Positions 2,469 through 54,131 of a DNA stretch of 64,000 bases are shown here, in pieces. The notes under the pieces were generated by a model. That model worked only from the letters and a program-made list of their open reading frames with translations, was not told where the DNA came from and searched no databases. This DNA is from Geosiphon pyriformis uo1 (taxonomy: Eukaryota; Fungi; Glomeromycota), in NCBI GenBank assembly GCA_016748015.1, contig JAAOMT010000647.1, forward strand, positions 66,880 to 130,879. Reading direction: 5' to 3'. A program made the position numbers and the translations under genes. Position 1 is the first letter of the stretch. Each line of letters starts with the position of its first letter.

Positions 2469-2869
2469 TAAATATATCACTGTCTTGCTATTTAAAAGGG
2501 ACAAAAGGTAGTTTTAGGGGAAAACAGGAGAATGAAGTTCTGCAAATATGATAATATGGAAACCTCAAACATTATTGATACGATGCACATTACTTTATTT
2601 GTTCATTAAACTTCTAGCAGGTAGTACTAATGTGCCATTTGAACGCTCCACGCTGTAAATCAGATATATTAATAGCAGCTTTATTCAACTGAAGTGTGAA
2701 TCTTTGTCAGCTCTCACCAATTTTGGGAACTGACGTTCTGATGTTTGTGAAACCTCAAAATCCAAGATTGTCGTGATCATTTTGAATTATTTTATTTTAT
2801 TTTTCCTGAACATCGGGTAGTTGCTTTTTGGTCTCGCTAATTCGTCAGGGTGAACATAGTTGAGAACTC
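2469..2869. promoter_or_regulatory. Probable bidirectional promoter region between the RhoGAP and PPR genes
   Basis: About 400 bp between two divergent start codons. No specific motif identified; inferred from geometry only. Confidence 0.4.
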
Positions 2870-5800
2870 ATGCAAATTGCTTCAGTGCCACCCAAGACAT
2901 TCACTGGACTCGCAGGCTCAAAAATAACTTATCTGGATGTTTGCAATTTAAAATTCGAGAAAAGTGGTCGACGCTCTTATTTTACAAGCAATTACGCTTC
3001 AAGTTACACTGCGACGTTACTACCAACAAGTGCTCCTGCGACGAATATTTGGAGAGCAGGTTCATATAACGCTACCGCTACCAACACCTCTTTTCTTGCT
3101 GAATACGAAAGACAAAAGCTTTCCTATGGACACCGTTCTCAGCGTCAACAACAAGCTGTAAACACAACTTGTGCTTCTGTGAGGTATGCACGCATCCTCG
3201 CACCGTGGAGAAGAAACGGTCCAAGTAAACAGAGTTCGACTTCTAAGACTCTTAACTCGCAAGAGAGTAGATTTTGCCTCGCTCACATAACGGCGAAAAA
3301 CTTACTAAAATATAGGTCACGAAATAAGAACCTACTGTTATCAGATATAGGTTTGTGTGAATTTTCACAACCTCGCTTACCGGCACCCTTCAATTTGATA
3401 AATCAGTCAAGACGTATTCTTAGATTTGCATTTACTTTGGCACAGTCACAGGATGATAGTCGTCTAAGGCGACTCTTGCGAAATGAGCGAGCTGATGAAT
3501 CAGATCTATGGAAAACCTATTTAGATATGGTCGAAAGGGGTGTCCACAAAAAGATTGAGGACAAAATTTTTCGTGTTTTTATGAAACGAATAATAGCGAA
3601 AGAACATGGTGAAGATGCAGTAGAAAAATTATTGAGATTACGCAATGATATGAAAAAATGCAATTACCACATTTGTGAAAGCGACGACATTCTTCTGATT
3701 AAGGCCTACTTGAAAATTGATAAACTAGAGCAAGCTCGTGAAATCTTGGATCAAATAGTAAGGGGGAAACCCCAAAAAATGTCTCGCATAGAACCTCCCT
3801 TAAACGAGAGTTTGATTGGGATAATTCAAGCCTATGTAAAGGCAGGAAAATTTGAGGAAATGGCAAGCTTAATTGAGATGATGAACAGTAAATTTTCTAC
3901 CAATAAGCAACAAAAAAACTTTATTAAAATGGTCCTCCTTGATAAAATAGAAATTAATTCTATAGCTTGTTTCAATAAACTCATAGATCGATCTCTAGTC
4001 GATGTTTCATTGGCAAAGGAAACTCTGAACAAATTAATTAGTAGCTCGAGAATCAGTGAGGCCTTTGAACTCTTTAAGCAAATGGAAGCATCAGAAATGC
4101 CCTTAGACTATAATGAATGTCAAATTTTTATTTGGAAATTAATAGAAAAGGAAGAATTGGATAAAGTGGCGCAACTGCTGGACAGATACAAACGAGCCAA
4201 ACGAATCTTGGATCCAGATATATATCAAAGTGTGTTTGATATGTATGTTAGAGCTTCAAATTTCAAAAAAGCTCATGATCTAATTGAGGATGTATTGAAT
4301 GAAGGTCATAACCCGAAAATGGAATATTTCGTTCAAGTTATGAAAGGTTATGGGAAACTTGGAGAATTCAATTCAGCTCTTGAACTTTGGAACAGAATGA
4401 AAGCTGCGGCACCATTTCTAGAAGCGAGTAAACATTCAAACCTCTTAATGGATGTATATCAAGCCACGTTCGACAAGTATATTCTAGCTTCAGATTTCAA
4501 TAAAGCACATGATCTAACTGATAAAATGTTAAATGCAGGTCATCTACCGAAAGTGAAATATTTCTATCAAATCATAAAAGGTTATGCGAAACTTGGAAAT
4601 GTCAATTCGGCCCTTCAAATTTGTAAATCAATGAAATATAATGGAATTAAGCCAAGCTTTGAAGTATATGCTTCGTTGATTCAATTGTTTTGCAAGGTAA
4701 ATGATATTGAATCGATGGAAAGAGTTTACAGTCGGATGATCGAGGAAGACATTTACCCGGACTTTATAGTATATAATATTTTGATTTCGGGCTATTGTAC
4801 GCATCATGATTTAGAGAAAGCATTTAAAGTTTGTCGAAAAATGATAGAAGCTGGTTATCAACCTGATTCTTATACGTACAATTCTCTGATTTCCCTTTTT
4901 GCGAATCGAGGGGATTCTCTAGGTGCTACGATGTTATTCAATGAGATGCGTTCATATGGGATTAAGGAGAACGCCTACACCTATACATCTCTCATCGATG
5001 CTTACGCAAAAGCATCTGATTTGAAAGGAGCAGAAAAGATCTTTAAAGATATGAAAAATTCAGGTATCCAGCCACAACTTCACACGTATAATGTTTTATT
5101 GAATGCTTATACAAAAGTAAAAGATCTCGAGAAAGTTGAAAGTTTTTATGATGAAATGGTCAAGAACAGGCTTCATCTAAATAGTTACTCATATTCCTGC
5201 CTTATGGAAGCTATGTGTTCAAAAAAAAGTTTGACTTCAGCAGAGTCTTTACTGCGATCTATCAAGAAATCTGACAGACCCGGGGCATCCACATATAATG
5301 TATTAATGCACGCGTATTCACGAATTGGTAAGCTTGAAAGGGCACATGAATTATTTGAAGAAATGGTCTCTTCAAATATTAAACCAACTCTGATCACTTA
5401 TGCGATATTGATTGATGGAAATTCACGAGCAGGAAATCTAAGGGTGGCTCGATCTTTGTTGTCTGAATTGATTGAACGATCATGGATAGAATCATCTTCA
5501 TCTCGTACCCTTTCCTCGTTGTTGAAAAAAGATGAGGAACCGGATGATGGGGTGGATGAAACGAAAATATCAGATAAAAAAATAATACCACATGCTTATA
5601 TATTCACACCGATAATGAATGCCTATGCAAAAGAAGGAAGAAGTAAAGCCGCGACAAAAATATTTCATGAGATGCTCATATATGGTATTCAACCGAATGA
5701 AGTTACATACACTATATTAATGGATGGATATCGTAACTGTGGTGATTATGAGGCTGTTTGGGAAGTGTGGAAAATTTTGCGTCGAGATCTGATGAAAAGT

Positions 5801-6505
5801 AAACCGTCGAATTCATTTCCTTTGAAAACTCTAGCTGAGCCAAAGGTGACAATGAAAAAGAAAAGAAAAACAAAAAAAAGCACCAAAAATAATGCTGATA
5901 GCATAAAAATTCGGAAAGAAATGGACGAGCAAAGGCATATTATCGGATCGCCGACCATAAAGTCATTAAGAACTAATAGGTTAATAAGGCCAACTTGTCA
6001 AATTGTTTCAATTTTAATTGATGCCCTGCGCTGTGCCCAAAGATATGATTTAATCTGTCAAGAATGGAAAAAACTTGAATCCGAGGGTTACTCATTCGAT
6101 TGTACAAATTATAATCAATATGCTCAAACATTAATTTTCATGGGTAAAATTTTGGAGGCTAGCGAATTTGTGAATAAACATTTATTAAAAGGGTGGAATC
6201 GTAATATAGCATTATGGGGATTAAATGGTGAAGAAAGGGAAAAACAAAAAACAAGCATATTAACAGAGATCAGCGGGATTTATCCACAGAGAAAAACATT
6301 AAGAATGCTTAATAACGCATTTCAAGATATAAAATCTGGTAGAGGAGTTTTGGTGGATGGTCAACTCAAATATGTTGATAATTCGGTGACAACCAATCAT
6401 TCTATTATAGATTTTCAAAAAATGTACCCAGAGTTGGTATTTATTGCAAAAATGTCAGCGGGATATCAAAAATGGGTATTAAAAATAGAACAACAACAAC
6501 AATAA
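2870..6505 (+). CDS. Pentatricopeptide repeat (P-class PPR) protein, probably mitochondrial; possibly Cya5/Pet309-like translational activator
   Basis: Single 1211-aa ORF with many 35-aa PPR motifs (e.g. PDSYTYNSLISLFANRGDSLGATMLFNEMRSYGIK) and a basic, Ser/Thr/Arg-rich N-terminus. The Cya5/Pet309 orthology is inference from the C-terminal region. Confidence 0.9.
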   Translation: MQIASVPPKTFTGLAGSKITYLDVCNLKFEKSGRRSYFTSNYASSYTATLLPTSAPATNIWRAGSYNATATNTSFLAEYERQKLSYGHRSQRQQQAVNTTCASVRYARILAPWRRNGPSKQSSTSKTLNSQESRFCLAHITAKNLLKYRSRNKNLLLSDIGLCEFSQPRLPAPFNLINQSRRILRFAFTLAQSQDDSRLRRLLRNERADESDLWKTYLDMVERGVHKKIEDKIFRVFMKRIIAKEHGEDAVEKLLRLRNDMKKCNYHICESDDILLIKAYLKIDKLEQAREILDQIVRGKPQKMSRIEPPLNESLIGIIQAYVKAGKFEEMASLIEMMNSKFSTNKQQKNFIKMVLLDKIEINSIACFNKLIDRSLVDVSLAKETLNKLISSSRISEAFELFKQMEASEMPLDYNECQIFIWKLIEKEELDKVAQLLDRYKRAKRILDPDIYQSVFDMYVRASNFKKAHDLIEDVLNEGHNPKMEYFVQVMKGYGKLGEFNSALELWNRMKAAAPFLEASKHSNLLMDVYQATFDKYILASDFNKAHDLTDKMLNAGHLPKVKYFYQIIKGYAKLGNVNSALQICKSMKYNGIKPSFEVYASLIQLFCKVNDIESMERVYSRMIEEDIYPDFIVYNILISGYCTHHDLEKAFKVCRKMIEAGYQPDSYTYNSLISLFANRGDSLGATMLFNEMRSYGIKENAYTYTSLIDAYAKASDLKGAEKIFKDMKNSGIQPQLHTYNVLLNAYTKVKDLEKVESFYDEMVKNRLHLNSYSYSCLMEAMCSKKSLTSAESLLRSIKKSDRPGASTYNVLMHAYSRIGKLERAHELFEEMVSSNIKPTLITYAILIDGNSRAGNLRVARSLLSELIERSWIESSSSRTLSSLLKKDEEPDDGVDETKISDKKIIPHAYIFTPIMNAYAKEGRSKAATKIFHEMLIYGIQPNEVTYTILMDGYRNCGDYEAVWEVWKILRRDLMKSKPSNSFPLKTLAEPKVTMKKKRKTKKSTKNNADSIKIRKEMDEQRHIIGSPTIKSLRTNRLIRPTCQIVSILIDALRCAQRYDLICQEWKKLESEGYSFDCTNYNQYAQTLIFMGKILEASEFVNKHLLKGWNRNIALWGLNGEEREKQKTSILTEISGIYPQRKTLRMLNNAFQDIKSGRGVLVDGQLKYVDNSVTTNHSIIDFQKMYPELVFIAKMSAGYQKWVLKIEQQQQ

Positions 6506-6886: not shown

Positions 6887-8157
6887 CAGTCTGGTAAGAA
6901 AAAAAATTGGAAAAATATGAATCTACAAAGATTGCATTTGGTTTAACTATTTTTGTAAGTTTTTTGAGGGTAAAAAATGGAAACAGAATATTAGGTAAGT
7001 GGCTGAGCTCTAAAAACATTTTCTCGCGTATTAACTAATAGTTTTTTTTAAAACTTGTCTTTTAAATGCCGACTTCAAAGCAAGAAACCCAACGACAAGT
7101 TGTATTACATTATTGGAAGCAAGGAATATGAAAGGTGAAAGAAATACAGAATAAAACGAATTTACCCCTTTCTAAAATCTATAATATCCTCAAAAAACTC
7201 AAAAAAAAAGGAACAATAAAGCATGTGAATGGTAATGGTCTGCCAAGAAAGATTACGCGAAATTCTTCGAAAGTATTAGAGGAGATTATTCGTAGAAATT
7301 CCTCAGTTTCGTCTAGATATTTAGCAATAAAGTTGGCTAAGAAAGGAATAAATGTTTCTCATGTTACTATTCAAAACCATTTATCCAATCTTAATTATAA
7401 AAAAAGTTTTCCTAAAGCAACTCCAATGCTGACTGAAGAGTATAAGCGAAAACGTGTAGAATGGGCCAAAAAACACCTGAACGACGATTGGAAAAGAACA
7501 GTTTTTACTGACGAAACAATTTTTCAACTTTTTCAAAACACGGTAAAACGTTGGCATAAAGGTACTAAACCAATTCGTCCTATGCCTAAAGATCGAACAA
7601 AAATTCTCGTGTGGGGAGGTTTCTACGAAAAAGGAAAGACTAGTTTATTCTGTTTTGTTCAAAACAATGAATACTCAATTTTATATAGATATTCTTCGTA
7701 ACTGCTTACCTGAAATTAGAGAAATGCTGGGGGATAATTGGCGATTCCAACAAGATAATGACCCCAAGCATACTAGCAAGCTTGCCAAAGATTTTATTGC
7801 TGAGAATACAACTGATTTATTGGGGTGGCCATCTAATAGTCCCGACTTAAACCCAATAGAAACCTTTGAGCTATTGTTAAAAAGAATGTAGAAAAAAGAA
7901 TGTGTCAAAATCGTAGTGAATTAGAGAGATTTATTGGGGAAGAGTGGCAAAATATTCCTGAATATATCTTAATTGGGTTAGTAGAATCAATGAGGCGACG
8001 TTGTGAAATGATAATTGAGACAAATTTCCTATTAATTTTTTTTTAATAAAATTATATGGTATTTGACTTTCTAATAAAAGTTGTTTTATGTAATTTGGCA
8101 CATTAATTAAGACATAGTAATTATTTTTATATTTCCAATTTTTTTCTTACCAGACTG
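6887..8157 (+). mobile_element. Tc1/mariner DNA transposon (DD34E), full length, inactivated
   Basis: About 27-bp TIRs (CAGTCTGGTAAGAAAAAAAATTGGAAA at 6887; TTTCCAATTTTTTTCTTACCAGACTG ending 8157) flanked by TA at 6885-6886 and 8158-8159. Confidence 0.95.
7066..8034 (+). pseudogene. Tc1 transposase pseudogene
   Basis: ATG 7066, in-frame TGA at 7129, frameshifts near 7655 and 7870. Motifs WKRTVFTDET, FQQDNDPKH, WPSNSPDLNPIE; 34 residues between the second D and E. End coordinate approximate. Confidence 0.9.
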
Positions 8158-10920: not shown

Positions 10921-13900
10921 ATGTCTTCAATTTCATCATCAATTGAAAACGCAACCTCACCTCTCGGCTAGCTTGAAGGAGCATTCATTGTCATCAGAGA
11001 ATGCGGTCTAAAAAATCCTTTTGCAAAAGTTGCTGAATTAGTGAAAAAATATCTTGAACAAAATCAGAAAACACCTGAAGATTTATTCGAGTGCCTGAAT
11101 AATAAAAGTTCAAAGTGTTCAATACACCATATATTGCTTGGGTTTTCTTTAGAAAATGGGATTGGAACTATCCCCGATTCAATAAAAGCATTTGTAGAAT
11201 TTCAGAAAGCAGCGAATGCGGAAAATTCTTTTGGACAATTCTTTTTAGGTCGTTGTTATTATAATGGATTAGGAACGACGAAAAATTCAGAAAAAGCATT
11301 TGAACTCCATTCAAAAGCAGCAGAGACAGTTTATACAAATGCACAATCCAATCTTGGCTGGTGTTATTGAAATGGAAAGGGAACGACGAAAAACTTGAAA
11401 AAATCATTTGAACTCTTTTCAAAAGCAGCAGAGGTGGGTCATACAACTGCACAATACAACCTTGGACTTTGTTATTTAAATGGAAAGGGAACGACGAAAA
11501 ATGAGGAAAAAGCATTTGAACTCTATTCAAAAGCAGCAGAGGTGGGCCATACAACTGCACAATACAACCTTGGACTTTGTTATTTAAATGGAAAGGGAAC
11601 GACGAAAAATTCAGAAAATGCATTTGAACTCTATTTAAAAGCAGCAGAGGCGGGTAATACAAATGCACAAACCAATCTTGGAAACTGCTATTTAAATGGA
11701 GAAGGAACGACGAAAAATTCAGAAAAAGCATTTGAACTCTTTTCAAAAGCAGCAGAGGCGGGAGATTTAGATGCACAAGCCCTTCTTGGATGCCTTTATT
11801 TAGAAGGATGGGGAACGAAGAAAAATTCAGAAAAAGCATATGAACTCTATTTAAAAGCAGCAGAGGCGGGTAATACAAATTCACAAACCAATCTTAGAAA
11901 CTGTTATCGAAATGGAGAAGGAACGACCGAAAATGAGGAAAAAGCATTTGAACTCTATTCAAAAGCTGTAGAGATGGGAGATTTAGATGCACAATACAAT
12001 CTTGGACTTTGTTATATAAATGAAGAAGGAACGACGAAAAATGAAGAAAAAGCATTTGAACTTTTTTCAAAAGTAGCAGAGGCGGGTGATACAAGTGCAC
12101 AAACCAATCTTGGACTTTGTTATTTAAATGGGTGGGGAACGACGAAAAACCTAAAAAAAGCATTTGAACTCTATTTAAAAGCAGCAGAGCCGGGTGATAC
12201 AAGTGCACAAATCAATCTTGGACTTTGTTATGATAACGGGTGGGGAACAAATATAAATTCAGAAAAAGCATTTGAACTCTTTTCAAAAGCAGCAGAGGCG
12301 GGTAATACAAATGCACAAACCAGGCTTGGAAACTGCTATTTAAATGGATGGGGAACGACTAAAAATGAGGAAAAAGCATTTGAACTCTATTCAAAAGTAG
12401 CAGAGGCAGGTAATACAACTGCATATTACGATCTTGGAAACTGTTATATATATGGAAGAGGAACGACGAAAAATTTAGAAAAAGGAATTGAACTCTATTC
12501 AAAAGCAGCGGCGGCCGGAAATTTACTTGCAAAATGCCAGCTTAATTCATATCATCGACATAGGCTAGAAATGACGAAAGGCTTGGTAAAAATGGGCAAT
12601 CTGATTTTAGAAACTGATATTGGAACATATCATCGAAATGGCTGGGAAACTACGAAAAATCTGGAAAAAACATTTGAACTTTATTTTAAAACAGCAGAAA
12701 CGGAAAATACTAGTGCACAATACAACCTTGGTTGGTGCTATCAAAATGGATGGGGAACAACAAAAGATCTAAAAAAAGCATTTGAACTCTATTTAAAAGC
12801 AGACGCAAATAAATTAAGTTATCAAAATGATTTTCCTGATTTGTATGACCGTAACCTGACTTTGGAGAATCAAGATGACCTGGAGCGTTCCATTTTGCAA
12901 TTCCAATATCGAGGTTTTAAATGTCTGGATATTTCCAAAGGAGAATTTTTAGATTTTGAAGCTTTCTTTAACCAGCTTTCAGATGAATTTAAGTGTCTTA
13001 AATGTGGCAACTTGGCAATAATCATGAGTGAATCTCCTATGTGTCCATTTTGCGATACTATTGAAAGGGACAATATCTTTAAAGCGGGGTTGCCTAAATG
13101 TCCAGAGTGTTATAGCACATTAAAAGATCCCCTTTGGTGTACATCTTGTGAATATTCACGCATTTCAAAGAGTCCGGGAACATGGTTGAGTGGAAATTCT
13201 CATATTAATCAGTATATAAATCATACACAGAGTATTTCTGTAAGCTGCAGAGGCTGCCTGGAATGGATTTCTCCCGACGAGATCAAGTCTTTAGATAAGG
13301 TGGGAGAGGGAGGATTTGGTATTGTTAAATAAGGTAGATGGACGAGAGGCAGAATTCTATTTTGGAATAAGAAAACTCAAAAGCATGAACGAAGTGGGGT
13401 TACGAAAGTTGCGTTGAAATATCTTAGAAACAGCCAAAGTATAGAATATATTAATTCAGATGAGGTATTTCTTTTAAAAAATCTGATATTTTTATTACTC
13501 TAATTTCTTTTTCTAATACTCGAAATGCTTCTACATAGTTTTTTGCGCATCTTCAAACCGCTTCTTGCAAATACATCCTTGAATGCTATGGAATAACCAA
13601 AGATGTCACGACCGATGAATTCATTATGGTCTTGCCATTTGCGGAACACGGAGACCTCAAAGCTTTTCTTAAGATGAACGAAAACACTCTTACTTGGGAA
13701 CTGTTTCTTTGTATTCTTTTTCAAATCGCTAGTGGTCTAAGGTCTATACATGAGTCAGAACTAGTGCATGGGGACTTACATCCTGGAAATATCCTTGTTT
13801 TGAAATTAAACCCCTTAAAAGTTGTTATCGCCGACCTAGGATTCTGTCGTCCTGCCAATTACTCTCCACAGTCTGGAGGAATTTTTGGTGTTGTTCGATA

Positions 13901-22593: not shown

Positions 22594-24900
22594 TCAATTT
22601 CTCGTTGTTCCAAAACAAAGTCCAAGATTGTATTGGGCAATTCTATTTCCCGCCTTTGCTGGTTCTGAATAGAGTTTAAATGCTTTTGCCAGATTTTTTG
22701 TTGTTCCCCATCCATTCTGATAACAAAGTCCAAGATTCAACTGTGCATTTTCATTTCCTCCCTCGGTTACTTTTAAATAGAGTTTAAACGCTTTTTCCAG
22801 ATTTTTCTTTGTTCCAAAACTATTTTGATAACACCAGCCAAGATTGTATTGTGCACTTGTATTTCCCGCTTTTGCTGCTTTTGAATAGTGTTCAAATGCT
22901 TTTTTCTCATTTCTCATTGTTCCTATTCCATTTTGATAACAAAGTCCAAGATTGTGTTGTGCATTTGCATTTCCCGCTTTTGCTGCTTTTGAATAGAGTT
23001 CAAATGCTTTTTTCCAACTCCTCATCGTTCCTATTCCATTTTGATAACACCATCCAAGATTAGTTTGTGCATTTGTATTTCCTGCCTCTGCTGCTTTTGA
23101 ATAGAGTTCAAATGCTTTTTTCTCATTTCTTGTCGTTCCTATTCCATTTTGATAGCACCATCCAAGGTTGTATTGTGCATTTGTATTTCCCGCTTTTGCT
23201 ACTTTTGAATAGAGTTCGAATGCTTTTTCTTTATTTACAATTGTTCCCAATCCATTTTGATAGCACCATCCAAGATCGTATTGTGCGGTTGTGTTTCCTG
23301 CCTTTGCTGCTTTCGAATAGAGTTCAACTGCTTTTTTCTCATTTCTCGTCGTTCCTATTCCATTTCGATAACAAACGCCAAGATTGTATTGTCCATTTGT
23401 ATTTCCTGCCTCTGCTGCTTTTGAATAGTGTTCAAATGCTTTTATCTCATTTCTCGTCGTTCCTATTCCATTTCGATAACAAACTCCAAGATTGTATTGT
23501 GCATTTGCATTTCCCGCTTTTGCTGCTTTTGTATAGAGTTCAAATGCTTTTTTCTCATTTCCTATTGTTCCTATTCCATTTTGATAACACCATCCAAGAT
23601 TAGTTTGTGCATTTGTATTTCCTGCCTCTGCTGCTTTTGAATAGAGTTCAAATGCTTTTTTCGCATCTCTCGTCGTTCCTATTCCATTTTGATAACACCA
23701 TCCAAGATTGTATTGTGCATTTGTATTTCCTGCCTCTACTGATTTTGAATAGAGTTCAAATGCTTTTTTCTCATTTCTCATCGTTCCTATTCCATTTTGA
23801 TAACACCATCCAAGATTCAATTGTGCATTTTTGTTTCCTCCCTCGGCTACTTTTGAATAAAGTTTAAACGCTTTTTCAGAATTTTTCGTTGTTCCCAAAC
23901 TATTTTGATAACACCATCCAAGATTGTATTGTGCACTTGTATGTCCCGCCTGTGCTGCTTTTGAATAGAGTTCAAATGCTTTTTTCTCATTTCTCGTCGT
24001 TCCTATTCCATGTTGATAACACAATCCAAGACTGTTTTGTGCATTTGTATTTCCTGCCTCTACTGTTTTTGAATAGAGTTCAAATGCTTTTTCCTCGTTT
24101 TTCGCCGTTCCCGATCCATTATAATAACAAAGTCCAAGATTGTATTGTGCACTTGTATTACCCGCCTCTGCTGCTTTTGAAAAGAGTTCAAATGCTTTTT
24201 CCTCATTTTTCGTCGTTCCCCATCCATTATTATAACAAAGTCCAAGACTGTATTGTGCACTTGTATGTCCCGCCTGTTCTGCTTTTGAATAGAGTTTAAA
24301 TGCTTTTTCCTCATTTTTCATTGTTCCCCATCCATTTCGATAACAAAGTCCAAGATTGATTTGTGCATTTATATTTCCCGCCTTGACTGCTTTTAAATAG
24401 AGTTTAAATGCCTTTTCTACATTTTTCGTTGTTCCTAATCCATTTTGATAACAAACTCCAAGACTGTTTTGTGCATTTGTATTTCCCGCTTTGGCTGCTT
24501 TTGAAAAAAGCTCAAATGATTTTCTTTCATCTTTTGAAGTACCAATTCCATTTCTGTAACAATAACCTAAAAAGAATTGTCCAAAAGAATCTTCTGCATT
24601 CGCTGCTTTCTGAAATTCTAAAAATGCTTTTATTGAATTGGGAATAGTTCCAATCCCATGGTCTAAAGAAAACCCAAGCAAAATATAGTCTATCGAACGT
24701 TTTGAACTTTTATTGTTCAATGAATTGAATAAATCTTCAGGTGTTTTATAATTGGACTCAAGATGTTTTTTCACCAATTCAGCAACTTTTGAATAATGGT
24801 AGCTTGGAAAAATGGCTAAACTTTTTTTGATGACAATGAATGTTCCTTCAACCCAATCGAATGATGAAGTTGCATTTTCAATTGATGATGTTGAAGACAT
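22594..24900 (-). CDS. Sel1-repeat protein, paralog 2: 18 tandem Sel1 repeats, kinase lost (768 aa from ATG 24900)
   Basis: Open frame with the same MSS..SIENATS N-terminus as paralog 1 and 18 uninterrupted 108-bp units (24588-22645). Could be an expressed truncated protein or a pseudogene. Confidence 0.75.
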   Translation of the reverse strand: MSSTSSIENATSSFDWVEGTFIVIKKSLAIFPSYHYSKVAELVKKHLESNYKTPEDLFNSLNNKSSKRSIDYILLGFSLDHGIGTIPNSIKAFLEFQKAANAEDSFGQFFLGYCYRNGIGTSKDERKSFELFSKAAKAGNTNAQNSLGVCYQNGLGTTKNVEKAFKLYLKAVKAGNINAQINLGLCYRNGWGTMKNEEKAFKLYSKAEQAGHTSAQYSLGLCYNNGWGTTKNEEKAFELFSKAAEAGNTSAQYNLGLCYYNGSGTAKNEEKAFELYSKTVEAGNTNAQNSLGLCYQHGIGTTRNEKKAFELYSKAAQAGHTSAQYNLGWCYQNSLGTTKNSEKAFKLYSKVAEGGNKNAQLNLGWCYQNGIGTMRNEKKAFELYSKSVEAGNTNAQYNLGWCYQNGIGTTRDAKKAFELYSKAAEAGNTNAQTNLGWCYQNGIGTIGNEKKAFELYTKAAKAGNANAQYNLGVCYRNGIGTTRNEIKAFEHYSKAAEAGNTNGQYNLGVCYRNGIGTTRNEKKAVELYSKAAKAGNTTAQYDLGWCYQNGLGTIVNKEKAFELYSKVAKAGNTNAQYNLGWCYQNGIGTTRNEKKAFELYSKAAEAGNTNAQTNLGWCYQNGIGTMRSWKKAFELYSKAAKAGNANAQHNLGLCYQNGIGTMRNEKKAFEHYSKAAKAGNTSAQYNLGWCYQNSFGTKKNLEKAFKLYLKVTEGGNENAQLNLGLCYQNGWGTTKNLAKAFKLYSEPAKAGNRIAQYNLGLCFGTTRN

Positions 24901-26355
24901 GGTTTTCAAATAACAGAAAGGGATTATTAAATTACAAAATATTTGTTTGGGGAAAGAAGGATTTTTAAAGAGTTCATTTCCCTGATAAATAGAATTTTAA
25001 ACGATAATTCATTTAAATCAGATTCCGAAAAGGGGTGTAATTTGAAGAATTCTTAATTGCTAAGTGAAACCTAATTGCCTCATTTTCTGGGCGCGGTGAG
25101 AAATACATAATTGGTGCAGAAACAAGTTTTGATAATTTTATATGTATAAGATTTTTTCTGCTAGCCCCAAAAAGATATTTTTTATAACAATCGAATTTGA
25201 GATTCATTAAACCGATAGAGATCGTCCGGGAAGAAATTGAAATGTACTTCTAACGCTTTTTCTTATTGGCAAGAAATACTCTTTAATTGATGATTGCTGC
25301 GGAAAATTAGTTTTAAGAATTCATGAATAAATTTCTTTTTATTAAGATTCTTTGGCTTAATAATTCTAACCTAAAAATCATTTTTCTAAAAAAATTTAAT
25401 TAACTGTTTTAATCGATTGAATGCAAAGAAACCAACATTTTTTAACGCTGTTGCATAAGAGAACTACAATTAATAAAGATCAATAATCCTTAAGGGCTTG
25501 GCTTGCAGAGAAAAACATCCTGAAGAATCTCAAGTAATGGTTCTCGATGAAATTGAACATATTAAAATGACACGGTATATAATAAGATAGTGTATGGTAC
25601 ACTGTCTTACATTGGAGACCATGTGGAGGTGGAGGCGGAGGCGTATTCCTTGTGTTTAATGTGATTAAAATAGGATACATGTAATGGTTTAAATTGGGAA
25701 TTGGAATTTGATCATATTTCTTAAGGAAAGGTTAATAAGATTGAATAGAATGAAAAGAAGTGCCGATTCCTTTAATTTTTTTTTTAATTTTGAACAGATA
25801 TTCAAAACAACTTCACCTATTTTTAATAGCATAATTCCGTGAAATATAAATTATTTATTTTGACAAAATCTTATTTCCAAATTTTTTAGAAGAATCCCAA
25901 AGTATTTAATATTGAAATTTAATTTTTAAGAAAATTTATTTTAACAGATATATTGTTTTTGGTAAAAAAAATATAATATTAAAGAATTATAATGAATTTT
26001 GAGAATTTTGAGAATTTAAAAAATAAAAAATTTTTTTTAAAAATTTTTAGTATGTTTCATTTAATTTTTAATAATTAAAATTAGCATTTTGAATGATATA
26101 AAAATTTTAAATAATAACTAATTTAAATAAATATGAGCAATTTTGAAAAATAATTCAACTGAAAAAAATAATATTTGAAAATTGATAATACTCAACCTTT
26201 TATATTTGAATTATAATTATCAGTTACTTCTTTTAACATTATGTAATTTTGACTAAATAAAACAGATGTAGAATACAAAGGTACAATCGGTATTGTATAT
26301 CACGGTAAAAAAAAATAAAAAAATAAAAAGTTAATATCTTTTCAGAAATAAACTA

Positions 26356-26900
26356 TAGTCAACTCTCTCTAAATGCACACCTTCGTGACCAACTTTTAGT
26401 GTGCATTTAAAGAAGTGTGAATTTGGAAAATAGTCCAATAATATTATTGCATGTGACTTTATAATAACAATTAATTATATGAAATTAAAAATTATTAATA
26501 AATTTTCATAAATTTTAACTTTAATAATGTTTCATCATATTTTAACTTGATAGTATTGTTGAGGTCTTGTTGTATAAGATATTTTGCTATTAATTCTAAA
26601 GCATTCTGTGCTTCTTTGTAAGTAATTTTTTGACATTCTATACTGTCATCTTTTTTTTTTATCATTATTATCTTCTTCTTTTTCTTTTTCTTCTCAATAA
26701 TTAGATTTATAATTTCTTGATTAATAAGTAGTTCAACTATGTTTTTTTCTTCTGGATAATTGATATATTCACTAATATTCAATATATTTCGGAAATAAAG
26801 TGCTTTAATATTTGTTTGGATTTCTTTTATAAAGTTATTGACATTATTATCATCATCAAAACTATGATCATTATTGATATTATTGTCATTATCAATATTT
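26356..26900 (-). mobile_element. pogo/Tigger-like transposon 3' fragment
   Basis: TA followed by (C>T)AGTCAACTCTCTCTAAATGCACACC TIR-like end with a subterminal palindrome (TAAATGCACAC...GTGTGCATTTA). The minus ORF 26495-26782 resembles the acidic C-terminus of Tigger/CENP-B-like transposases. The other end was not found. Confidence 0.6.
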
Positions 26901-27741
26901 AAGATTTTATTTTTTTCATTAAATAAATTTATTTAAAATTAAACAAAGCTTAGTTTTAAGAATAAATATTAATAATCTTAGATTTTTTGTATTTATAAAA
27001 ACAAAAATATATATAATATATATTTTTAAATGGTTGAATGCTGTGGTAATATTAACTTTTTGTTAAAACTTTGGACCTAATTTTTTAAATTTTCATTTAA
27101 ATTTCAATTAATAAAGTTTTTTATTAATATTAAAATTAAAATTACTGTTTAAATATGAAAAAAAATGTATATTAATAAATTTTAACATTAAAAAATAAAA
27201 ATAATAAAAATTTGATTAATTATATATATAATCAAGTGTTTTTTGATTAAATAAAATAAAATAAAAAATCTAAATATAATAGTGTAAATTTTTTATATAA
27301 TATAGTTCTTTAAAATCTATTTGTTTCTTTGTTTTAATAAGGCAGCATCAAACCACATTGAAAAACAATGCAATTAATTTAGAAAGATATGTTAAAGAAA
27401 AACAAGAATTTGAATAAGAGTTAGAACATTTCGTAAACCCAATTTAGTGAATGTCACTTTTTATCTAAAAAGATAATTGACTATATTAAAAAGGGCTACA
27501 GTAACCCCTGTCTAATTAAATAATAAAAAAATTGGAAAGTTTTTTATCCCGGCCAAAACAAATAAATATCTCTAGTTTTAAAGTCTAATGGAGAAAATTA
27601 CTCTTATCTCATAAAAAAACCCATATATTGGAAAAAAACAAGATCTCTACAAAATTTTACCATAGGTTACTCAAGCACTTTGTTCCTACTATAATACTTC
27701 CATTCTATAAAAATTAAATAATCAATAACTTGGAACAAAAA

Positions 27742-27975
27742 ATGTTACCCAATCTTTTCATATTTTTCTTTATGACTTCCATTGTTCTTATTGCTTTTTC
27801 CTCAATTTCTGCAGGATCATTTATATTAGTTAAACGTAATAATTTAGCGAGCACGAACAGCCTTAATACTCCAAACCTAGCAAGCACCCCATCGAAAGAC
27901 AAACAACCTATTAAACAAAATCAAAAATTTGCAAATCCTCCTCCTACACCAACTCGAAATCCTCCAAGACTTTAG
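27742..27975 (+). CDS. Small secreted peptide precursor (77 aa): signal peptide, KR dibasic site, Pro-rich C-terminus
   Basis: MLPNLFIFFFMTSIVLIAFSSISA-GSFILVKR-NNLASTNSLNTPNLASTPSKDKQPIKQNQKFANPPPTPTRNPPRL; ATG in AAAAATG context; higher GC than its flanks. Confidence 0.6.
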   Translation: MLPNLFIFFFMTSIVLIAFSSISAGSFILVKRNNLASTNSLNTPNLASTPSKDKQPIKQNQKFANPPPTPTRNPPRL

Positions 27976-30096
27976 GGAAAGATAAATACTCTAATTGTGT
28001 TTTAAAGATAGCCATCTGGCTTATTATTATTATTATTTTCTTTTTCTCTGCTTTACTGAAATGTGTCCTAATTTTTGATTGCCGTTTCAGTTTCCTCATT
28101 TAATATTTCTTTTGAAACTTCATCTTTGGTAATCTGTCAATTTTGTATTAACTGAATTGATGATATTTTCCGAAAGCTTGCTCTTTTTAAAATGGTATAT
28201 ACATGGCCAAAATTACATCAAATTTTTTTGCTTATGAACTGTGTTATCTCATTCAGTGTTTTTTAATTACTGTTGGTTTTAAATGTAATTTAGATTTTGG
28301 TTTTAATATATATATAATATTTCTATTCTTTATTTCAAACTTTCTTGATAATTTAAATATTTTTTTTTACAGTAAATTTAACCATTCTTATATACTTTAA
28401 TAGTAACACCACTGTTTTTTATATCATATTATGTGGTTTGATATAAACCAGTTATTATAATCATTAAAAATTAAATGACACATAATAAAAATTTTTAAAA
28501 TTCAATCATAATTATTTAATATTATATTTTTACAAAAAAATCCATATTATTAAATTAAAAAAAAAAAGTGTTTAATAATTATAAATTATAAAAAAAAAAT
28601 TTTAAAAATTAAAAATTTTTTTTTTATTTTGAGTTATAATTCGTTTAAAATCTCTTATTATTAAAATTTCATAAAATTTGCAATATTTTTTTATTCATCA
28701 ATTTAATTTTAATAAAAATAAGTTACATAATAGTATTTATAATCATGTCTAGAAATGAATGAATAAATAAATAAATAAAATTATTAGAGAAATAATATAA
28801 GCAAAGATTTTTTTAATGATAAATAGCCTATTAAAAAATAATTATCAAAGATATTTGATTGAATATTCTCAATGAAAAGATTTATAGTACATGTAAAGCC
28901 TCAAAAGATGAAATCTTTAACACTATTGTATATTGGGATCACTAAAAATATTAAAAGTTAATAGTAGAGTTGTGTAAATAAAAGCAGTGGGCTTTGCATA
29001 CAGTTCAACTATAAAATAAAATATATTTTTATTTATACTAAACTCACTGATTATAATGTATGCTGTCAATTCAGTGTTAAAAAGAAATGAGATTGCTAGA
29101 AAAATGATACTAATCAAAGAAATATGTACAAATCAATTATATTTGCTCTTTTAAATTCAAAAGTTTAAAATTAATTAAATTGGTAAATGAAAAATCATAT
29201 TTTTTATAGTGAATGTAAATATCACTTATGACATAAACTAAAATTTATTTGATAGAAACAACCACAAAAACTATTATTTTAAATCAATAAAAGTTTTTAA
29301 AATATTCATTCAATTTTAAACTTTAAACTAATAAGTTATCAATTTGTTCAATTTCATCGAGGATCACCAATCGAGATTCCTCAGAATGTTTTCTCTGCCA
29401 AGACAAGCCCTTAAAGATTATTAATCTTTACTAATTGTAGTTCTCTGCTGTAACAGCGTTAAAAAAGGTTAGTTTCTTACCAGATGATTAGGTTAATATA
29501 TTAAATAATCGATTGAATCTATTCATTTTTCCATCAAATTTTTGGGAGTTCATCAACTCCATACATAATTGAGCAACCATCAAATTTTACAGTTGGTGTA
29601 AGATGGCGACTCACCGGTTGCGTAGGTATGAGACGTGGTTTTTTTGTGCTTATTTCTGTGACATAATCCATGCTGCCGGAGTATATGCCTTACGCTGTCA
29701 ACTGATAAATGGATTCCTAAATTCAGGTTAGAGTTGGAAAATTTTTCAGATGCGTAGGCGATCAAGTTTTGGTTTGTCATTGAAGTTCTCGGTTTCTTCA
29801 TTATTTTTCCAGGTGTTTAATATCGCGGACCCTGTACCCTTCTTCTTGTGGTGTATATATTTGGGAGCATTTTTCTTGTTAAAAAATTTATATTTATATT
29901 TAGTAAAAAGCTTATAAATGTAAAAAAAAAAAACTTATGTCGCATCCTGGAAAGACAATAAGAAACATATTAATTGTAGTCAATTATAGAACCTTCTTTC
30001 CTATAATTTGAAAAATTAAAAGTTTAAAAATCCTTTTTTTCCTCATAAAAAAAATATTTCTAATTTAATAATTCTTTTTCAGTTATTTTGTAAATC

Positions 30097-32908
30097 ATGT
30101 CTTCAACTTCAACAATTGAAAACCCAATTTTATCTCTTGATTATATTAAAGTACCTTTCATCTTCATCAAGGAAAGATTAACCAATTTTCCAAAAAAAAC
30201 CATTAAGCGTAATCAAAAAAATTGTGAAAAAGCATTTAAACGTTATTTAAAAGAAGCAGAGACTGGAAATTCAAGTGCTCAAGTTAATCTTGGATTATGT
30301 TATGAAAATGGAGAAGGAAAAACGAAAAATTTAGAAAAAGCATTTGAACTCTATTCAAAAGCAGCAGAAGCGGGAAATACAATCGCACAATACGATCTCG
30401 GATGGTGATATCAAAATGGATTAGGAACAAAGATAAATAAAGAAAAAGCATTTGAACTTTATTCAAAAGCAGCAGAGGTGGGAAATAAAACCCCACAATA
30501 CTGTCTTGGAATTTGTTATACTAATGGAGAAGGAACAACAAAAGATTTTTGGAAAAAGCTTTTGAACTCTATTTAACAGCAGCAGAGGCTGGAGATCCAA
30601 ATCCACAAAGCAATCTCGGATGGTGTTATCAAAAAGGATTAGGAACAACGATAAATTTAGAAAAAGCATTTGAATTTTATTCAAAAGCAGCAAAGGCGGG
30701 AAATACAAGTGCACAATACAATCTTGGATTGTGTTATCAAAATGAATCTGGAACAACGAAAAATCTGGAGAAAGCATTTGAATTTTATTTAAAAGCAGCA
30801 GAGGCGGGAGATTCACTTGCACAAAATAATATTGGATGGTTTTATCAAAATGGATTAGGAACAACAAAAGATCAGGAAAAAGCATTCGAACACTATTCAA
30901 AAGCAGCAGAGGCGGGTAATACAATCGCAAAATACAATCTTGAAGTCTATTATTATAGTGGGAATCTAAGCTTACAAAAAATTTTTAGAACGTATCAAAG
31001 AAATGGATGGAAGACTATGGAGGACTTGGAAAAATTATTTGAACTGTATTTAAAAACAGTTGAGGAGGGAAATATAACTGGACAATATAACCTTGGATGG
31101 TGTTATCAAAATGGATGGGGAACGACAAAAAATCTGAAAAAAGCATTTGAACTCTATTTAAAAACAACAGAGGCAAATAATTCAAGTTATCAAAGTAATT
31201 TTTATGATTTAAAAGCCTGTGAACTTTTTTTAGATAATCAAAGTGACCTAGAACGTATCATATTACAATTTCAAAAGTCGAGGTTTAAAATGGGCGGCTA
31301 ATTTCACGGGGAGAATTTTTAGATTTTGAAGCTTTCTTTGAACAGCTTTCAGATGAATTCAAGTGTCTTAAATGTGGCAACTTTGGTATAATCATTAATG
31401 GATTCGCTATATGTCCATTTTGCGATACTAATGAAATTGATAAAAACTTTGAATCAGGGTTGCCGAAATGTCTAGAATGTTATAGAACATTAAAGATCCA
31501 CTTCGGTGTAAACATTGTGAATATTCACGATTTTCAAAGAGTCGGGGAACATGGGATAGTGGAAATGATGATATTAATCAGTATATAGCTTATACACAGA
31601 AAATTTCTGAAAGCTGTAGAGGATGCCTAGAATGGATTTCTCCCGACGAGATCAAGTTTTTAGATAAGGTGGGAGAGGGAAGATTTGATATTAACAAAGA
31701 AGGTAGATGGACGAGAGGTAGAATTCTATTCTGGGATAAAGAAAAATGAAAAGCATGAACGAAGTGGGGTTACGAAAGTTGCGTTGAAATATCTTAGAGA
31801 CAGCCAAAATATAAAATAAATTAATTCAGTTGAGGTATTTCCTTTTAAGAAATCTATATACAATTTTGATTATTCTAATTTCTTTTACTAACACTAGAAA
31901 ACGCATTAAAATAGTTTATTGCTCATCTTAAAACTGCATCTTGCAAATATATCCTTGAATGCTATGGAATAACCAAAGATGTTACAACCGATGAATTTAT
32001 TATGGTTTTGCCATTTGCGGAACACGGAGACCTCAAAGCTTTTCTTAAGATGAACGAAAACACTCTTACTTGGGAACTGTTTCTTTGTATTCTTTTTCAA
32101 ATCGCTTGTGGCCTAAGGTTTATACATGAGTCAGGACTAGTGCATGGGGACTTACATCCTGGCAATATCCTTGTTTTGAAATCAAACCCTTTAAAAATTG
32201 TCATCGCGGACCTAGGATTCTGTCGTCATGCTAATTCTTCAAACCCCGAAGAAATTTTTGGTGTTATTCAATACCTAGCACCTGAAATTTGTAACTCATC
32301 AGGTCATACCACGTATAGCAATATTTACAGTTTTTCTATTATTTCTTGGGAAATTATTTCAGGAGAAACACCTTGGAATAATATTAAAGATCTTAAGCGC
32401 TTGCGATTTGAAGTGTTTAAAGGAAAGCGCCCTACAATTAATGAAAAGCATACACCTCAATATATTAAAGAAATGATTCGAAAAAATTGGCATCAAGATC
32501 CGTATTGTCGTGATACTGCAAAAGAACTTCAACAAAAAATTACTGCTCCTCACGATAACTGTAACTTTAATGAACTTGTAACTAGAAAAAAAGGTGTTAA
32601 CTATGATATAATAAGTTATAGAAGCCAATCAATCTCAAAAATTCAATTAATATCAAACCTTATATATGGTAAGCATTTTATTTAGTATTATTATTTTTTT
32701 TTAATAGCTAAATAACTTTTTTGATTTAAACGCCTTTTTTTTCAGATCCGGATTACTCTAATAGCTCAAGTCAATTTAACTACCCAAGTTCTAATAAAAT
32801 TGAAGAAATCAGTAAGCACTTTAAATTTATTTTAATAATTATATTTAATTATATTTATTAATATTTAACTATAAAATGGTCTTTCAAATAGAAGAAGAAT
32901 TCGAGTAA
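30097..32908 (+). pseudogene. Sel1-repeat / CxxC / TKL-type kinase, paralog 3 (degenerate)
   Basis: Same architecture as paralog 1 with 6 core Sel1 repeats. Stop at 30406, frameshifts near 30548, 31290, 31495 and 31745, altered Gly loop (GEGRFD). HGDLHPGNIL, ADLG and YLAPE retained. Short terminal exons inferred to 32908. Confidence 0.88.
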
Positions 32909-38381: not shown

Positions 38382-38664
38382 TAACAATATTTTAAATATT
38401 TTTTTTTTAAATAAAATATACAAGTTTTATAATAAAAATAAAACAATATTTAAAATAAAAACATATTTAAATTTTAAATTTGTTTGTTTATAAATAATAT
38501 AAATACAATAGTTTTAATAATAATAATAATAATAAATTATAATTAAAAAGTTTAAATAAAATATTAAAAATAATATATATAAAACCAAAAAGTTATATAA
38601 TTATATTATAAAAATTTGGAATATTATAAAAAAAATTTAAATTAAGTTTTTAAATAAAATTAAA

Positions 38665-39949
38665 GTTGCAGGCTATTGCTCTGGCTCTTGAATGTATTCC
38701 TTTTTTTTGTTTGGTTAACTTGTTTTCAGACAGCCAAGCTGCTTTGGATGTATACAAAACTGAATTCTTGTTGGCTCATCCGGACTTCAAAAATCAGTGT
38801 TGGATCGAACAACGTTATATTGCTAACATTGTTCATAAAAAAAATTTAGATGTAAATTGGATTAAGATTAAGGGTCACTCAGACGTCTCGAGCAATGAAC
38901 GGGCTGATGTGTTCGCTAGGATAGCTGCTTTTTCCTCTTGGCAGCTACTCTATATGGTTAGTGAACATTTTTTGAGGGCTGGTGGCTCTGTGGTTTCTGG
39001 TAATTCAAAACATTTTGTTTGTGATGTTTTCCATTCTGTTTACCATGCACGTTGGGAGGTTGGTTCTGGTTCTAAAGTCGTGGTAAACAGGCTGTGTACT
39101 GATATTGACTGGTCCAAATCTTCTTCAGTGTGGCATCCGGACTTCCACCTAGCTACTGGTTTTACTAGTGCTCAGACTGCTGGTTTTTGGATGTATTTTA
39201 TGAAGGCTTTATACTATCGCCTTCCAGTGGCTGTGCATAAGTGTGTTTATAATAAGTGTTATTCTAGTGTTGCGTGTTTGTTCTGTGAGGATGTTAAGGT
39301 CTCAGACCATGTTTTTTCCTGCCCATCTGATGCTGCTGGTCGCGCTCACTTGGTGGACGTTCATACTTCTATTTGGAAATTGCACTCAGGTTTATCTCAG
39401 TTTTTCTCTTGTGTTTTACAGTTGCTGTCTACTCACTTCTCTGATGTTATTGTTAGTACAGCTCTGTGTAAGGGCTTTGTTTTTTGTGAGTGGTATCATG
39501 AGTCTGTTTCCATCTTCAAGGATTCTAAGGTTGCAGCCCAGAATATTGTGGCCTTTGTGCATGATTTCTGTCTTGCATTCCAGGATGATATCTGGCTAGC
39601 ACAAACTAAACACCAAGCTTTTATGAAGAAGGGTGAGTTGATTCTGCATGATGGTTCTGTTCCTGTAGCTGTATCTGGTCTTTTCTCTGTGCTTTCGGCT
39701 AGTGTTGTCAGGTTGTTAGGCATTGCTGATGCTTTTGGTGTTGGTTTTGGATATCATAGATGTTATTTGTTCTTCTCAGGTATTAGAGATAAGACTTCTG
39801 TTCATATAGGGGTGTAGTGTTATTCTGATTGGTTTGAATGGTTAGTCACGTGTAGAAAATGCATGATTTACACTTAGTTTAGATCATATATTGATGTATT
39901 GTACTAGTTTGCATTTGGACTTTACTCAATAAACGTGGTAAAAAAAAAA
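38665..39949 (+). mobile_element. 5'-truncated LINE (RNase H + CCHC end of ORF2, 3' UTR, poly-A)
   Basis: Open 383-codon frame LQAIALALEC..FSDSQAAL..KIKGHS..NERAD (RNase H) and CLFC..SDHVFSC; AATAAA at 39928, A-tail 39940-39949. Confidence 0.9.
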
Positions 39950-39972
39950 TTAAAATTAAAAAAAATAAAAAA

Positions 39973-51024: not shown

Positions 51025-51769
51025 TTGTTTTTTTGCTATACTATAACTTTGAAATATCGTTTATTACTAGTTAGTTTTTTTAAAATTTAGTATATGTGTA
51101 AACATAATTGTAACTATATTGCGAGCATGTTATTATATTAATTTCTAAAAGAACACCAAATATTACCAAAAAATTTTCTGTTTTTTTTAATATTATTATC
51201 AATAAAAGTTGTTAAACTTTTAATAAGCTAATTTATTTTTAAAATATTTTTTTATACTTTAAACTGTTTATAGTAATAAAATAGCCAATTTTGTCTTAAT
51301 TATTTACATAGTTATTTTGCAGTAAAATCAGTTTTTTTACAAAAATTCTCAACTTTAAACTATTTAATAATATAAAAAATAATAATAATAAAAAAATAAT
51401 AAGAAATATTTTCTGTTTAAATCTAAAATTAAATAAATAATTACTGAAATTATTAATTAATTAATTTCAAAATATTAATTATAATTTGTAAATTTTAAAA
51501 CAATATTAATTATAAAAAAAGTTTTTGTTTTTTAAAATAAAAATTTATTTTATTAATTTGTAATAATTATTTAATATTTTTAAACTTAAATAAGATAAAA
51601 TATATTTTTTTATATAATTTATTTAGATTAAATTAGCTAATTCTATTTGTTTTTTATTTTTAAAATTGTTAACTTTTTGATAATTTTTGTATTTGTTTTT
51701 TTTTGTTATTATTGTTTAATAAAATATGTTTAAAAGTATTATTGTTATTAATATTAAAAATACTTTTAA

Positions 51770-53290: not shown

Positions 53291-54131
53291 TGTTACTCAT
53301 AAAATATAAGAAGTATATTAGCATATAAATTAGCCAATTAGGAGTAGATGTAGTAAATATGGAATTCCAGGATTTTTTTCAAAGAAATTACAGGATTCCA
53401 GAAATTGCAGAATTTTTATATAAAAAATTGCAGAATTCCAAAATTCTTCTTAAAGAAATTACAGGATTCCAAGAATTCCAGGATTTCTGGTGTAAAAAAT
53501 TGAGGAATTAAGAAATCTCAATTATGTATATATAACAGTAGTATTAGAAATAAAAAAGACAGACCTTTTAGTTTAGATTTTATCTAAGCTACTTTTCCAA
53601 ATCACAAATATTAATAAATAATTATTTGCTATCACAATCTACTTTTCACTATTAACATGAAGTGTTAATAATAATACTTGACCACAGTAGAACAATAGCT
53701 CTTAATCATAGCTATTGATGGGATACTAACTTAATTGCCTTGGCTTAACTTCTTTAATTTTCTTTTATTTTTCTTTTATTTGTCTTTTTTTTCTTGTTGT
53801 TGTATACTAATTGATTAAAAAGAATAACACATGAAGTTACTGATGTCAGGATATAGCATTGGTAAAAGACCCAAAAATAAGAGTAGAATACTCAATTAAG
53901 AATAGCTCACTAAGAGGATTACCAGTCATCATACTGAAAAAAAATTGACAAAACTGTAGTTTCAGGAAGCTATGAATAAAAAAATTATTGAATCTCTGTT
54001 CATTATACAAAAAACTCAACCAAAACCTTCATATTAATAAAACTTTCAGAAATTACCAACCATATTACTTATTGAGCACCAAGTTACGGGTTTGTTATTT
54101 GATTCAAGACCCCAAATAATCACCTGTAACA
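53291..54131 (+). repeat. 5' LTR of element A (841 bp)
   Basis: TGTTAC...GTAACA inverted termini, followed by a TTTGG PBS-like start; homologous to 60026-60863. Confidence 0.85.

What the first reader, a model, noticed from the sequence alone, without database searches (positions are those of the whole stretch)
10921..32908. Candidate necroptosis-like immune cluster: MLKL-like pseudokinase among variable Sel1-array kinases
Seen: within about 22 kb, one intact MLKL-like/(pseudo)kinase/Sel1 gene lies among three paralogous genes with N-terminal Sel1 arrays of different length. Two end in kinases with catalytic motifs (VALK, HGDLHPGN, DLG); one has lost the kinase. Established: animal necroptosis pairs an active kinase (RIPK3) with a four-helix-bundle pseudokinase executioner (MLKL), and fungal NLRs use repeat arrays of high internal identity as sensors. 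Inference: the Sel1 arrays sense non-self ligands and the attached kinase activates the MLKL-like protein, giving an NLR-independent sensor-kinase/executioner pair. Sensor turnover next to a conserved executioner fits birth-and-death evolution. Caveat: both families are greatly expanded in such fungi, so linkage may be chance.
Basis: partly seen in the sequence, partly recalled or inferred. Interest (0 to 1): 0.85.

Follow-up and report, generated by a model that had tools for sequence, protein, structure and literature searches.

The report
MLKL-like gene among broken sensor kinases
In the fungus Geosiphon pyriformis, an intact gene shaped like the animal cell-death protein MLKL sits among three broken copies of a large, species-specific family of repeat-bearing kinases that look like fast-evolving sensors; the neighbours cannot form a working pair here, but the kinase family itself is worth testing as a fungal receptor set.

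Summary
The anatomy is real, but the local pair is not. The window is Geosiphon pyriformis. The MLKL-like gene (17096-19572, minus; G9A89_004303) is intact. Its four-helix bundle folds like the MLKL N-terminal domain, its kinase looks dead (DFG to NFT, no Gly-loop) and one splice junction is seen in reads. It belongs to a family spread across Glomeromycotina and already noted in silico.

None of the three Sel1-array neighbours can make a kinase: paralogue 1 has three in-frame stops, paralogue 3 a stop and several frameshifts, paralogue 2 has lost it. They belong to a family of about 180 copies found only in Geosiphon, mostly broken. Its repeats have four hypervariable positions on one helix face (pN/pS about 2-3), as in NLR sensor repeats.

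Recent MLKL-like paralogues do lie near such kinases more often than uniform chance. But only 7 of 184 kinase loci are involved, the kinases cluster anyway, and nine homologous loci in eight other species lack such neighbours. Most likely: co-residence in a duplication-prone region. A genome-wide sensor-kinase-to-MLKL pathway is possible (about 12%) but untested. The scan reported similar clusters on other pieces of this genome.

The parts
10921..14292 (+). Paralogue 1 (K1): N-terminal helical piece, about 12-14 Sel1 repeats, Cys-rich linker, TKL-type kinase; intron 13465-13538; further short 3' exons not mapped. Pseudogene with in-frame stops at 10969, 11368 and 13330, no frameshift
13330..13332 (+). 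TAA stop right after the kinase Gly-loop; cuts off VALK/HGD/DLG
   Evidence: no conflicting base listed in run X1, which may be the assembly's own source
17096..19572 (-). Intact MLKL-like gene G9A89_004303, 691 aa; exons 19572-19239, 19146-18977, 18901-18318, 18232-18113, 18044-17893, 17811-17096
   Evidence: intron 4 spliced in one contig of run X2
18977..19572 (-). Four-helix bundle plus brace helices (residues about 25-173), MLKL N-terminal fold
   Evidence: Pfam MLKL_N E 1e-5, just under cut-off; VIA best hit 6ux8, Z 12.9, rmsd 3.0, 137 aligned; Foldseek top 7 rows all MLKL
17730..18790 (-). Pseudokinase (about residues 226-479): VAVK lysine kept, alphaC Glu to Gln, HHD, DFG to NFT, no Gly-loop; conserved Ser363 and Thr370 in the activation segment
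17099..17530 (-). C-terminal Sel1-like helical hairpins
   Evidence: Pfam Sel1; model helices 521-681
22594..24900 (-). Paralogue 2 (K2): open frame of 768 aa with 17-20 Sel1 repeats, ends in a stop; no kinase
22324..22593 (-). Decayed tail of paralogue 2: last repeat and start of the Cys-rich linker, frameshifted
28002..28290 (-). Decayed fragment of a second MLKL-like gene (pseudokinase exon), about 70% identical to the intact one, 3 stops
30097..32908 (+). Paralogue 3 (K3): about 7 Sel1 repeats, Cys-rich linker, kinase; pseudogene (stop 30406, several frameshifts); sister of paralogue 1

Best explanation
Two separately expanding signalling families share a duplication-prone region. The MLKL-like gene is a live member of an old Glomeromycotina family. 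It most likely works as a phosphorylation- or ligand-gated switch in which the pseudokinase and Sel1 tail hold back a membrane-attacking four-helix bundle (fold and dead-kinase motifs shown; switching and killing inferred from MLKL). The three neighbours are dead or truncated copies of a Geosiphon-specific family of receptor-like kinases whose Sel1 arrays probably bind variable ligands (hypervariable surface shown; binding inferred). At this locus they cannot phosphorylate anything. Their closeness to the MLKL-like gene comes from local duplication and repeated arrival of copies in the same unstable region, not from a dedicated two-gene switch.
For: All three neighbours are kinase-null. About 184 kinase-family loci, 7 within 20 kb of a close MLKL-like copy; 40% of kinase loci have another within 20 kb against at most 4.4% genome coverage; six of seven clusters of three or more have no close-clade MLKL-like copy. 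C788:65-87 kb is a 95% duplicate of C642:121-141 kb including intergenic DNA. Paralogues 1 and 3 are sisters (97/97). Six distant MLKL-like genes in this genome are 71 kb or more from any such kinase, or on contigs without one. Nine homologous loci in eight other species have no Sel1-array kinase neighbour. The kinase family is Geosiphon-only. Expanded kinase and Sel1 genes occupy a gene-sparse, methylated, TE-linked compartment in Rhizophagus (PMC8647823).
Against: Ten of eleven close-clade MLKL-like copies or fragments lie within 18 kb of a kinase-family copy, above uniform chance. The neighbouring kinases are not one clade (AU p=1.4e-6), so one co-duplicated cassette does not explain them. 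On C642 an intact kinase with all catalytic motifs lies 18 kb from an intact MLKL-like copy. Both families diverged over a similar span (dS about 0.25-0.47).
Confidence: 0.62

Rival explanations
1. A Geosiphon-specific immune network: many dispersed Sel1-array kinases sense non-self ligands and phosphorylate a few MLKL-like executioners. Local linkage is a relic of selection to keep sensor and executioner together, and the three copies here are retired sensors.
For: Repeat positions 3, 7, 10 and 13 are hypervariable with pN/pS 1.8-2.8 on a near-invariant scaffold in four arrays (paralogue 2 alone 1.88, half-sample range 1.2-3.4, rest 0.53). Kinase under purifying selection (omega 0.3-0.5) with intact catalytic motifs in live copies. 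Conserved activation-segment Ser/Thr in the pseudokinase. Kinases of several lineages lie near the recent MLKL-like clade. Precedents for linked sensor and executioner: nwd2/het-S (PMC10197012) and a wheat NLR/MLKL pair (10.64898/2026.08.07.743466).
Against: No interaction or phosphorylation data. The conserved Ser/Thr are shared with species that lack this kinase family. 96% of kinase loci have no MLKL-like neighbour. No fixed orientation or shared promoter. Comparator kinases in the tree were chosen for likeness to paralogue 1, and gene conversion can scramble such trees.
Confidence: 0.14
2. The MLKL-like protein is a self-contained sensor-executioner (its own Sel1 tail senses, the pseudokinase switches, the bundle kills) or a non-lethal scaffold, and needs no upstream kinase. 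The Sel1-array kinases signal to other targets.
For: The three-part layout is kept across Glomeromycotina without the kinase family. Paralogues with and without the Sel1 tail exist. The bundle diverges faster between paralogues (omega 0.6-0.9) than the pseudokinase (0.3). This is compatible with the best explanation and differs only in how the MLKL-like protein is activated.
Against: The Sel1 tail is short and under purifying selection (omega 0.44-0.51), unlike a diversifying sensor. Conserved activation-segment Ser/Thr hint at phosphoregulation.
Confidence: 0.18
3. The stops and frameshifts are assembly errors, and paralogue 1 is a live kinase.
For: Paralogue 1 has no frameshift and its kinase shows omega about 0.35-0.4. 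The public annotation lists a 1065-aa product.
Against: Three separate substitutions are needed. The annotation reaches its length only by skipping each stop and the Gly-loop. Stops are common across the family. Run X1 lists no other base at 13330 (not independent, and coverage of that exact base was not shown).
Confidence: 0.04

Closest known systems
Glomeromycotina MLKL-like kinase-Sel1 family (TCDB 1.A.105 homologues noted in PMC8778642; e.g. Ambispora gerdemannii 10996_t, Rhizophagus irregularis P0157)
   Same: Same bundle-pseudokinase-Sel1 layout and degenerate motifs (DFG to NFx in 68 of 73). The window gene groups with its Geosiphon paralogue and the Ambispora protein.
   Different: A recent local expansion of about ten mostly broken copies in Geosiphon, interleaved with Sel1-array kinases not seen beside the homologues. 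Function untested in any member.
Animal MLKL with RIPK3 (necroptosis); plant MLKLs (AtMLKL3, wheat Pm13, R3AK)
   Same: Four-helix bundle, brace and kinase-fold domain; best structural matches are 4btf, 6ux8, 6zvo, with 6ka4 also matched. VAxK lysine kept while DFG is lost.
   Different: Extra C-terminal Sel1 repeats and a 25-residue disordered leader. No RHIM/amyloid necrosome partner seen. No upstream kinase identified. Killing not shown.
Fungal NLRs with repeat-array sensors linked to HeLo/HELL executioners (nwd2/het-S, HET-E)
   Same: Repeat arrays of high internal identity (78-92% mean nucleotide identity) with a few hypervariable positions, variable repeat number and many dead copies.
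   Different: No NACHT/NB-ARC domain and no amyloid motif; array is N-terminal and fused to a TKL-type kinase through a Cys-rich linker; linkage to the executioner is neither fixed nor conserved.
Expanded Glomeromycotina tyrosine-kinase-like and Sel1 gene families (PMC8647823)
   Same: High copy number, lineage-specific, clustered, many pseudogenes; proposed roles in environmental perception.
   Different: Here the Sel1 array precedes the Cys-rich region and kinase; the closest non-Geosiphon kinases (37% identity or less) carry no Sel1 domain.

Membership tests
MLKL-like proteins (architecture) | N-terminal four-helix bundle plus brace of MLKL type | tested here: met
   AF2 pLDDT 85; VIA top hit 6ux8 Z 12.9, rmsd 3.0, 137 aligned, with 3ay5 close behind at 12.0; Foldseek top 7 all MLKL though E above 0.01; Pfam MLKL_N 25.4 bits against cut-off 27, paralogue P0001 38.8
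MLKL-like proteins (architecture) | Kinase-fold domain lacking catalytic motifs | tested here: met
   DFG to NFT, alphaC Glu to Gln, no Gly-loop; family-wide. Sequence criterion only; catalytic Asp of HxD and the beta3 Lys are kept
MLKL-like proteins (function) | Bundle oligomerises and permeabilises membranes on activation | not testable with these tools
   needs expression and death assays
RIPK3-MLKL-type kinase/executioner pair | An active upstream kinase is encoded by the partner gene | tested here: not met
   all three neighbours in the window are kinase-null; an intact copy lies 18 kb from an intact MLKL-like copy on C642
RIPK3-MLKL-type kinase/executioner pair | Kinase binds and phosphorylates the pseudokinase activation loop | not testable with these tools
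   no complex prediction or assay available; candidate Ser363/Thr370 conserved
Linked sensor/executioner gene pair (nwd2/het-S type) | Adjacency conserved across species | tested here: not met
   0 of 9 homologous loci in 8 other species; one Funneliformis locus has a convergent kinase without Sel1
Linked sensor/executioner gene pair (nwd2/het-S type) | Adjacency enriched within the genome beyond local duplication | tested here: inconclusive
   above uniform chance, but only two or three non-independent regions and kinases cluster anyway
Fungal NLR | NACHT or NB-ARC domain | tested here: not met
   no such Pfam hit in any piece
NLR-type repeat sensor array | High internal repeat identity with hypervariable surface positions under diversifying selection | tested here: met
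   pairwise counts are not independent and no codon-model test was run

The most novel reading that the evidence does not exclude
Geosiphon has evolved a repertoire of NLR-independent receptor kinases (hypervariable Sel1 array plus active kinase) that activate MLKL-like executioners by phosphorylation: a fungal necroptosis-like pathway with a real kinase step, possibly used to screen cyanobacterial partners or other non-self cells.
Probability: 0.12. Interest if true: 0.85.

Novelty: new variant of a known kind. Interest (0 to 1): 0.38.

Why it matters
How arbuscular-mycorrhiza-type fungi detect non-self and whether they use regulated cell death is open, and their huge kinase and Sel1 families have no assigned function. 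This locus does not give a working pair. It does point to two testable things: a family-wide MLKL-like protein whose killing ability has not been assayed in the papers found here, and a Geosiphon-specific kinase family whose repeats carry the selection signature of immune receptors. I found no paper describing the second, within a library that misses most subscription journals. It also shows that public gene models here hide pseudogenes.

Tried and rejected
Pfam on exon 1 alone found nothing and phmmer of the N-terminal domain against PDB sequences found nothing; fold search was needed. A single co-duplicated kinase-MLKL cassette: rejected by the AU test and by the lack of intergenic similarity between the window and C642/C788; only C788 and C642 are true duplicates. 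A shared head-to-head promoter: rejected, as orientations are tail-to-tail, head-to-head and tandem. No run on record as RNA was found; evidence of expression is one spliced contig. Searches of the window's spliced genes were made exon by exon by reference; the joined model was built only inside scripts and never typed into a tool. Full-length alignment, Pfam, folding and Atlas steps used the public protein ids P0154, P0001 and P0274 returned by the tools. Paralogue 1 was read through only with X at its stops, inside scripts.
Full report
Source. Close paralogues of the window's genes are annotated proteins of Geosiphon pyriformis, and the public protein G9A89_004303 (P0154) is identical to the gene model I built from the window. 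The window is G000:C536:66880-130879 of a 128-Mb assembly.

The MLKL-like gene. It has six exons on the minus strand, 19572-17096, all GT-AG, and gives 691 aa with no internal stop. One contig of run X2 skips intron 4 exactly as modelled, which is slight evidence of transcription. Pfam finds MLKL_N at residues 37-149 just under the cut-off (25.4 against 27 bits; the paralogue P0001 passes at 38.8), a tyrosine-kinase-like domain and Sel1 repeats. The full model (pLDDT 85) has mouse MLKL 4btf as best Foldseek match. The N-terminal model matches the human MLKL N-terminal domain best in VIA (Z 12.9, rmsd 3.0, 137 residues; an unrelated bundle scores 12.0) and fills the top seven Foldseek rows with MLKL. 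The kinase keeps the beta3 lysine and the HxD aspartate but has Gln for the alphaC Glu, NFT for DFG and no Gly-loop; these changes are family-wide in 73 aligned homologues. Ser363 and Thr370 in the activation segment are conserved (63 and 59 of 73). The family covers Ambispora, Rhizophagus, Gigaspora, Funneliformis, Acaulospora, Paraglomus and others. Its presence in Glomeromycotina with Sel1 repeats has been noted in silico (PMC8778642), and HeLo-like domains joined to kinases or pseudokinases are mentioned in a review (PMC12881547).

The neighbours. All three share an N-terminal helical piece and a Sel1 array; the family continues with a Cys-rich linker and a kinase. Paralogue 1 has stops at 10969, 11368 and 13330; the last falls between the Gly-loop and VALK, so no kinase is made. 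Its public model skips each stop with a predicted intron. Paralogue 3 has a stop at 30406 and several frameshifts. Paralogue 2 is an open 768-aa Sel1 array followed by a decayed linker fragment. Paralogues 1 and 3 are sisters. A decayed second MLKL-like fragment lies at 28002-28290.

The kinase family. Three genome searches give about 184 loci on 107 contigs, a lower bound. Only about 30 of 147 linker matches lie in open frames of 480 aa or more (my count), so most copies are broken. Two protein searches found this family only in Geosiphon (46% identity or more); the nearest outside kinases are 37% or less and, lack Sel1. Repeats are 78-92% identical at the DNA level. Positions 3, 7, 10 and 13 of the 36-residue unit, spaced as one helix face, are hypervariable with pN/pS 1.8-2.8 while the scaffold is nearly fixed (paralogue 2 alone 1.88 against 0.53). 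These are pairwise counts, not a codon-model test. The kinase exon is under purifying selection (omega 0.3-0.5), and a copy on C642 is intact with all motifs. By established knowledge of TPR/Sel1 and NLR repeats this is what a diversifying ligand-binding surface looks like; the ligand is unknown.

Is the linkage meaningful? For: the recent MLKL-like clade (about 75-83% DNA identity) occurs essentially only on C536, C642 and C788, and ten of its eleven copies or fragments are within 18 kb of a kinase-family copy, whereas at most 4.4% of the genome is within 20 kb of one. The neighbouring kinases are not one clade (AU p=1.4e-6; 14 rows, comparators chosen for likeness to paralogue 1). Against: the window was chosen for this adjacency; C788 is a 95% segmental duplicate of C642, which leaves one further contig with two clusters. 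Most of those MLKL-like copies are themselves broken. Kinase copies cluster without MLKL (40% have another within 20 kb) and only 7 of 184 are near a close MLKL-like copy. The six distant MLKL-like genes have no such neighbour. Orientation varies. Nine homologous loci from eight other species show housekeeping or unrelated neighbours; one Funneliformis locus has a convergent kinase with no Sel1 array. Expanded kinase and Sel1 genes are known to sit in a separate, TE-linked compartment in Rhizophagus (PMC8647823).

How it most likely works. Shown: MLKL-type fold, dead-kinase motifs, sensor-like repeat variation, broken neighbours. Inferred: the MLKL-like protein is an autoinhibited membrane-attacking switch released by phosphorylation or by ligand binding at its Sel1 tail, and live members of the kinase family are receptors with unknown substrates. 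The two need not be connected; at this locus they cannot be. I give 0.62 to co-residence in a duplication-prone region, 0.18 to a self-contained or non-lethal MLKL-like protein as the main reading, 0.14 to a real kinase-to-MLKL network with relic linkage, and 0.04 to assembly error.

Earlier scan notes on other pieces of this genome reached a like view (s1-515866, s1-486172, s1-499184), and one noted the hypervariable positions in this window (s1-528970, seen after my own test). They are not independent evidence. Handling: the window's spliced genes were searched exon by exon by reference and the joined-model search was left out; full-length steps used public protein ids returned by the tools; the broken kinase was read only with X at its stops; read laying was given 5950 bases.

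Verdict. Observation partly confirmed; interpretation partly supported. The MLKL-like gene is a new member of a noted but untested family; the N-terminal Sel1-array kinase family is a new variant of known expanded kinase families. Interest 0.38.

Noticed in passing
window 27745-27975 (+): Single-copy 76-aa ORF with a hydrophobic signal-like N-terminus, a KR site and a proline-rich C-terminal motif; could be a small secreted peptide precursor. No paralogue in the genome.
   Followed up: partly
window 2864-6502 (+): Long intact pentatricopeptide-repeat protein ORF (1213 aa), probably a mitochondrial RNA factor.
   Followed up: partly
window 38654-47000 and 52000-64000: Decayed retroelement-like sequence on both strands with skewed composition; 38993-39958 and 51761-52722 are 63% alike in inverted orientation.
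   Followed up: no
window 7132-7888 (+): ORF pieces resembling a Tc1/mariner-type transposase by eye; not tested.
   Followed up: no
G000:C642:18000-143000 and C788:65000-87000: Larger tangle of the same two families: at least eight MLKL-like copies or fragments and three to four kinase copies, with one intact of each 18 kb apart; C788 is a 95% duplicate.
   Followed up: yes
L042, L046, L049: In Rhizophagus, Funneliformis and Glomus the MLKL-like orthologue keeps an HSP20 gene upstream (and a C2H2 zinc-finger gene in two), i.e. ordinary conserved synteny.
   Followed up: no
P0318: A kinase of the bacterial endosymbiont GvMRE of Glomus versiforme matches the kinase region at 34% and is fused to an AIG1-type GTPase domain.
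   Followed up: no
P0002, P0003, P0008, P0009: Other Glomeromycotina-like proteins carry two to four tandem copies of the MLKL-type bundle, some without a kinase.
   Followed up: no
window 25426-25563 and 29341-29478: 139-bp inverted repeat pair, 86% alike, upstream of paralogues 2 and 3.
   Followed up: no
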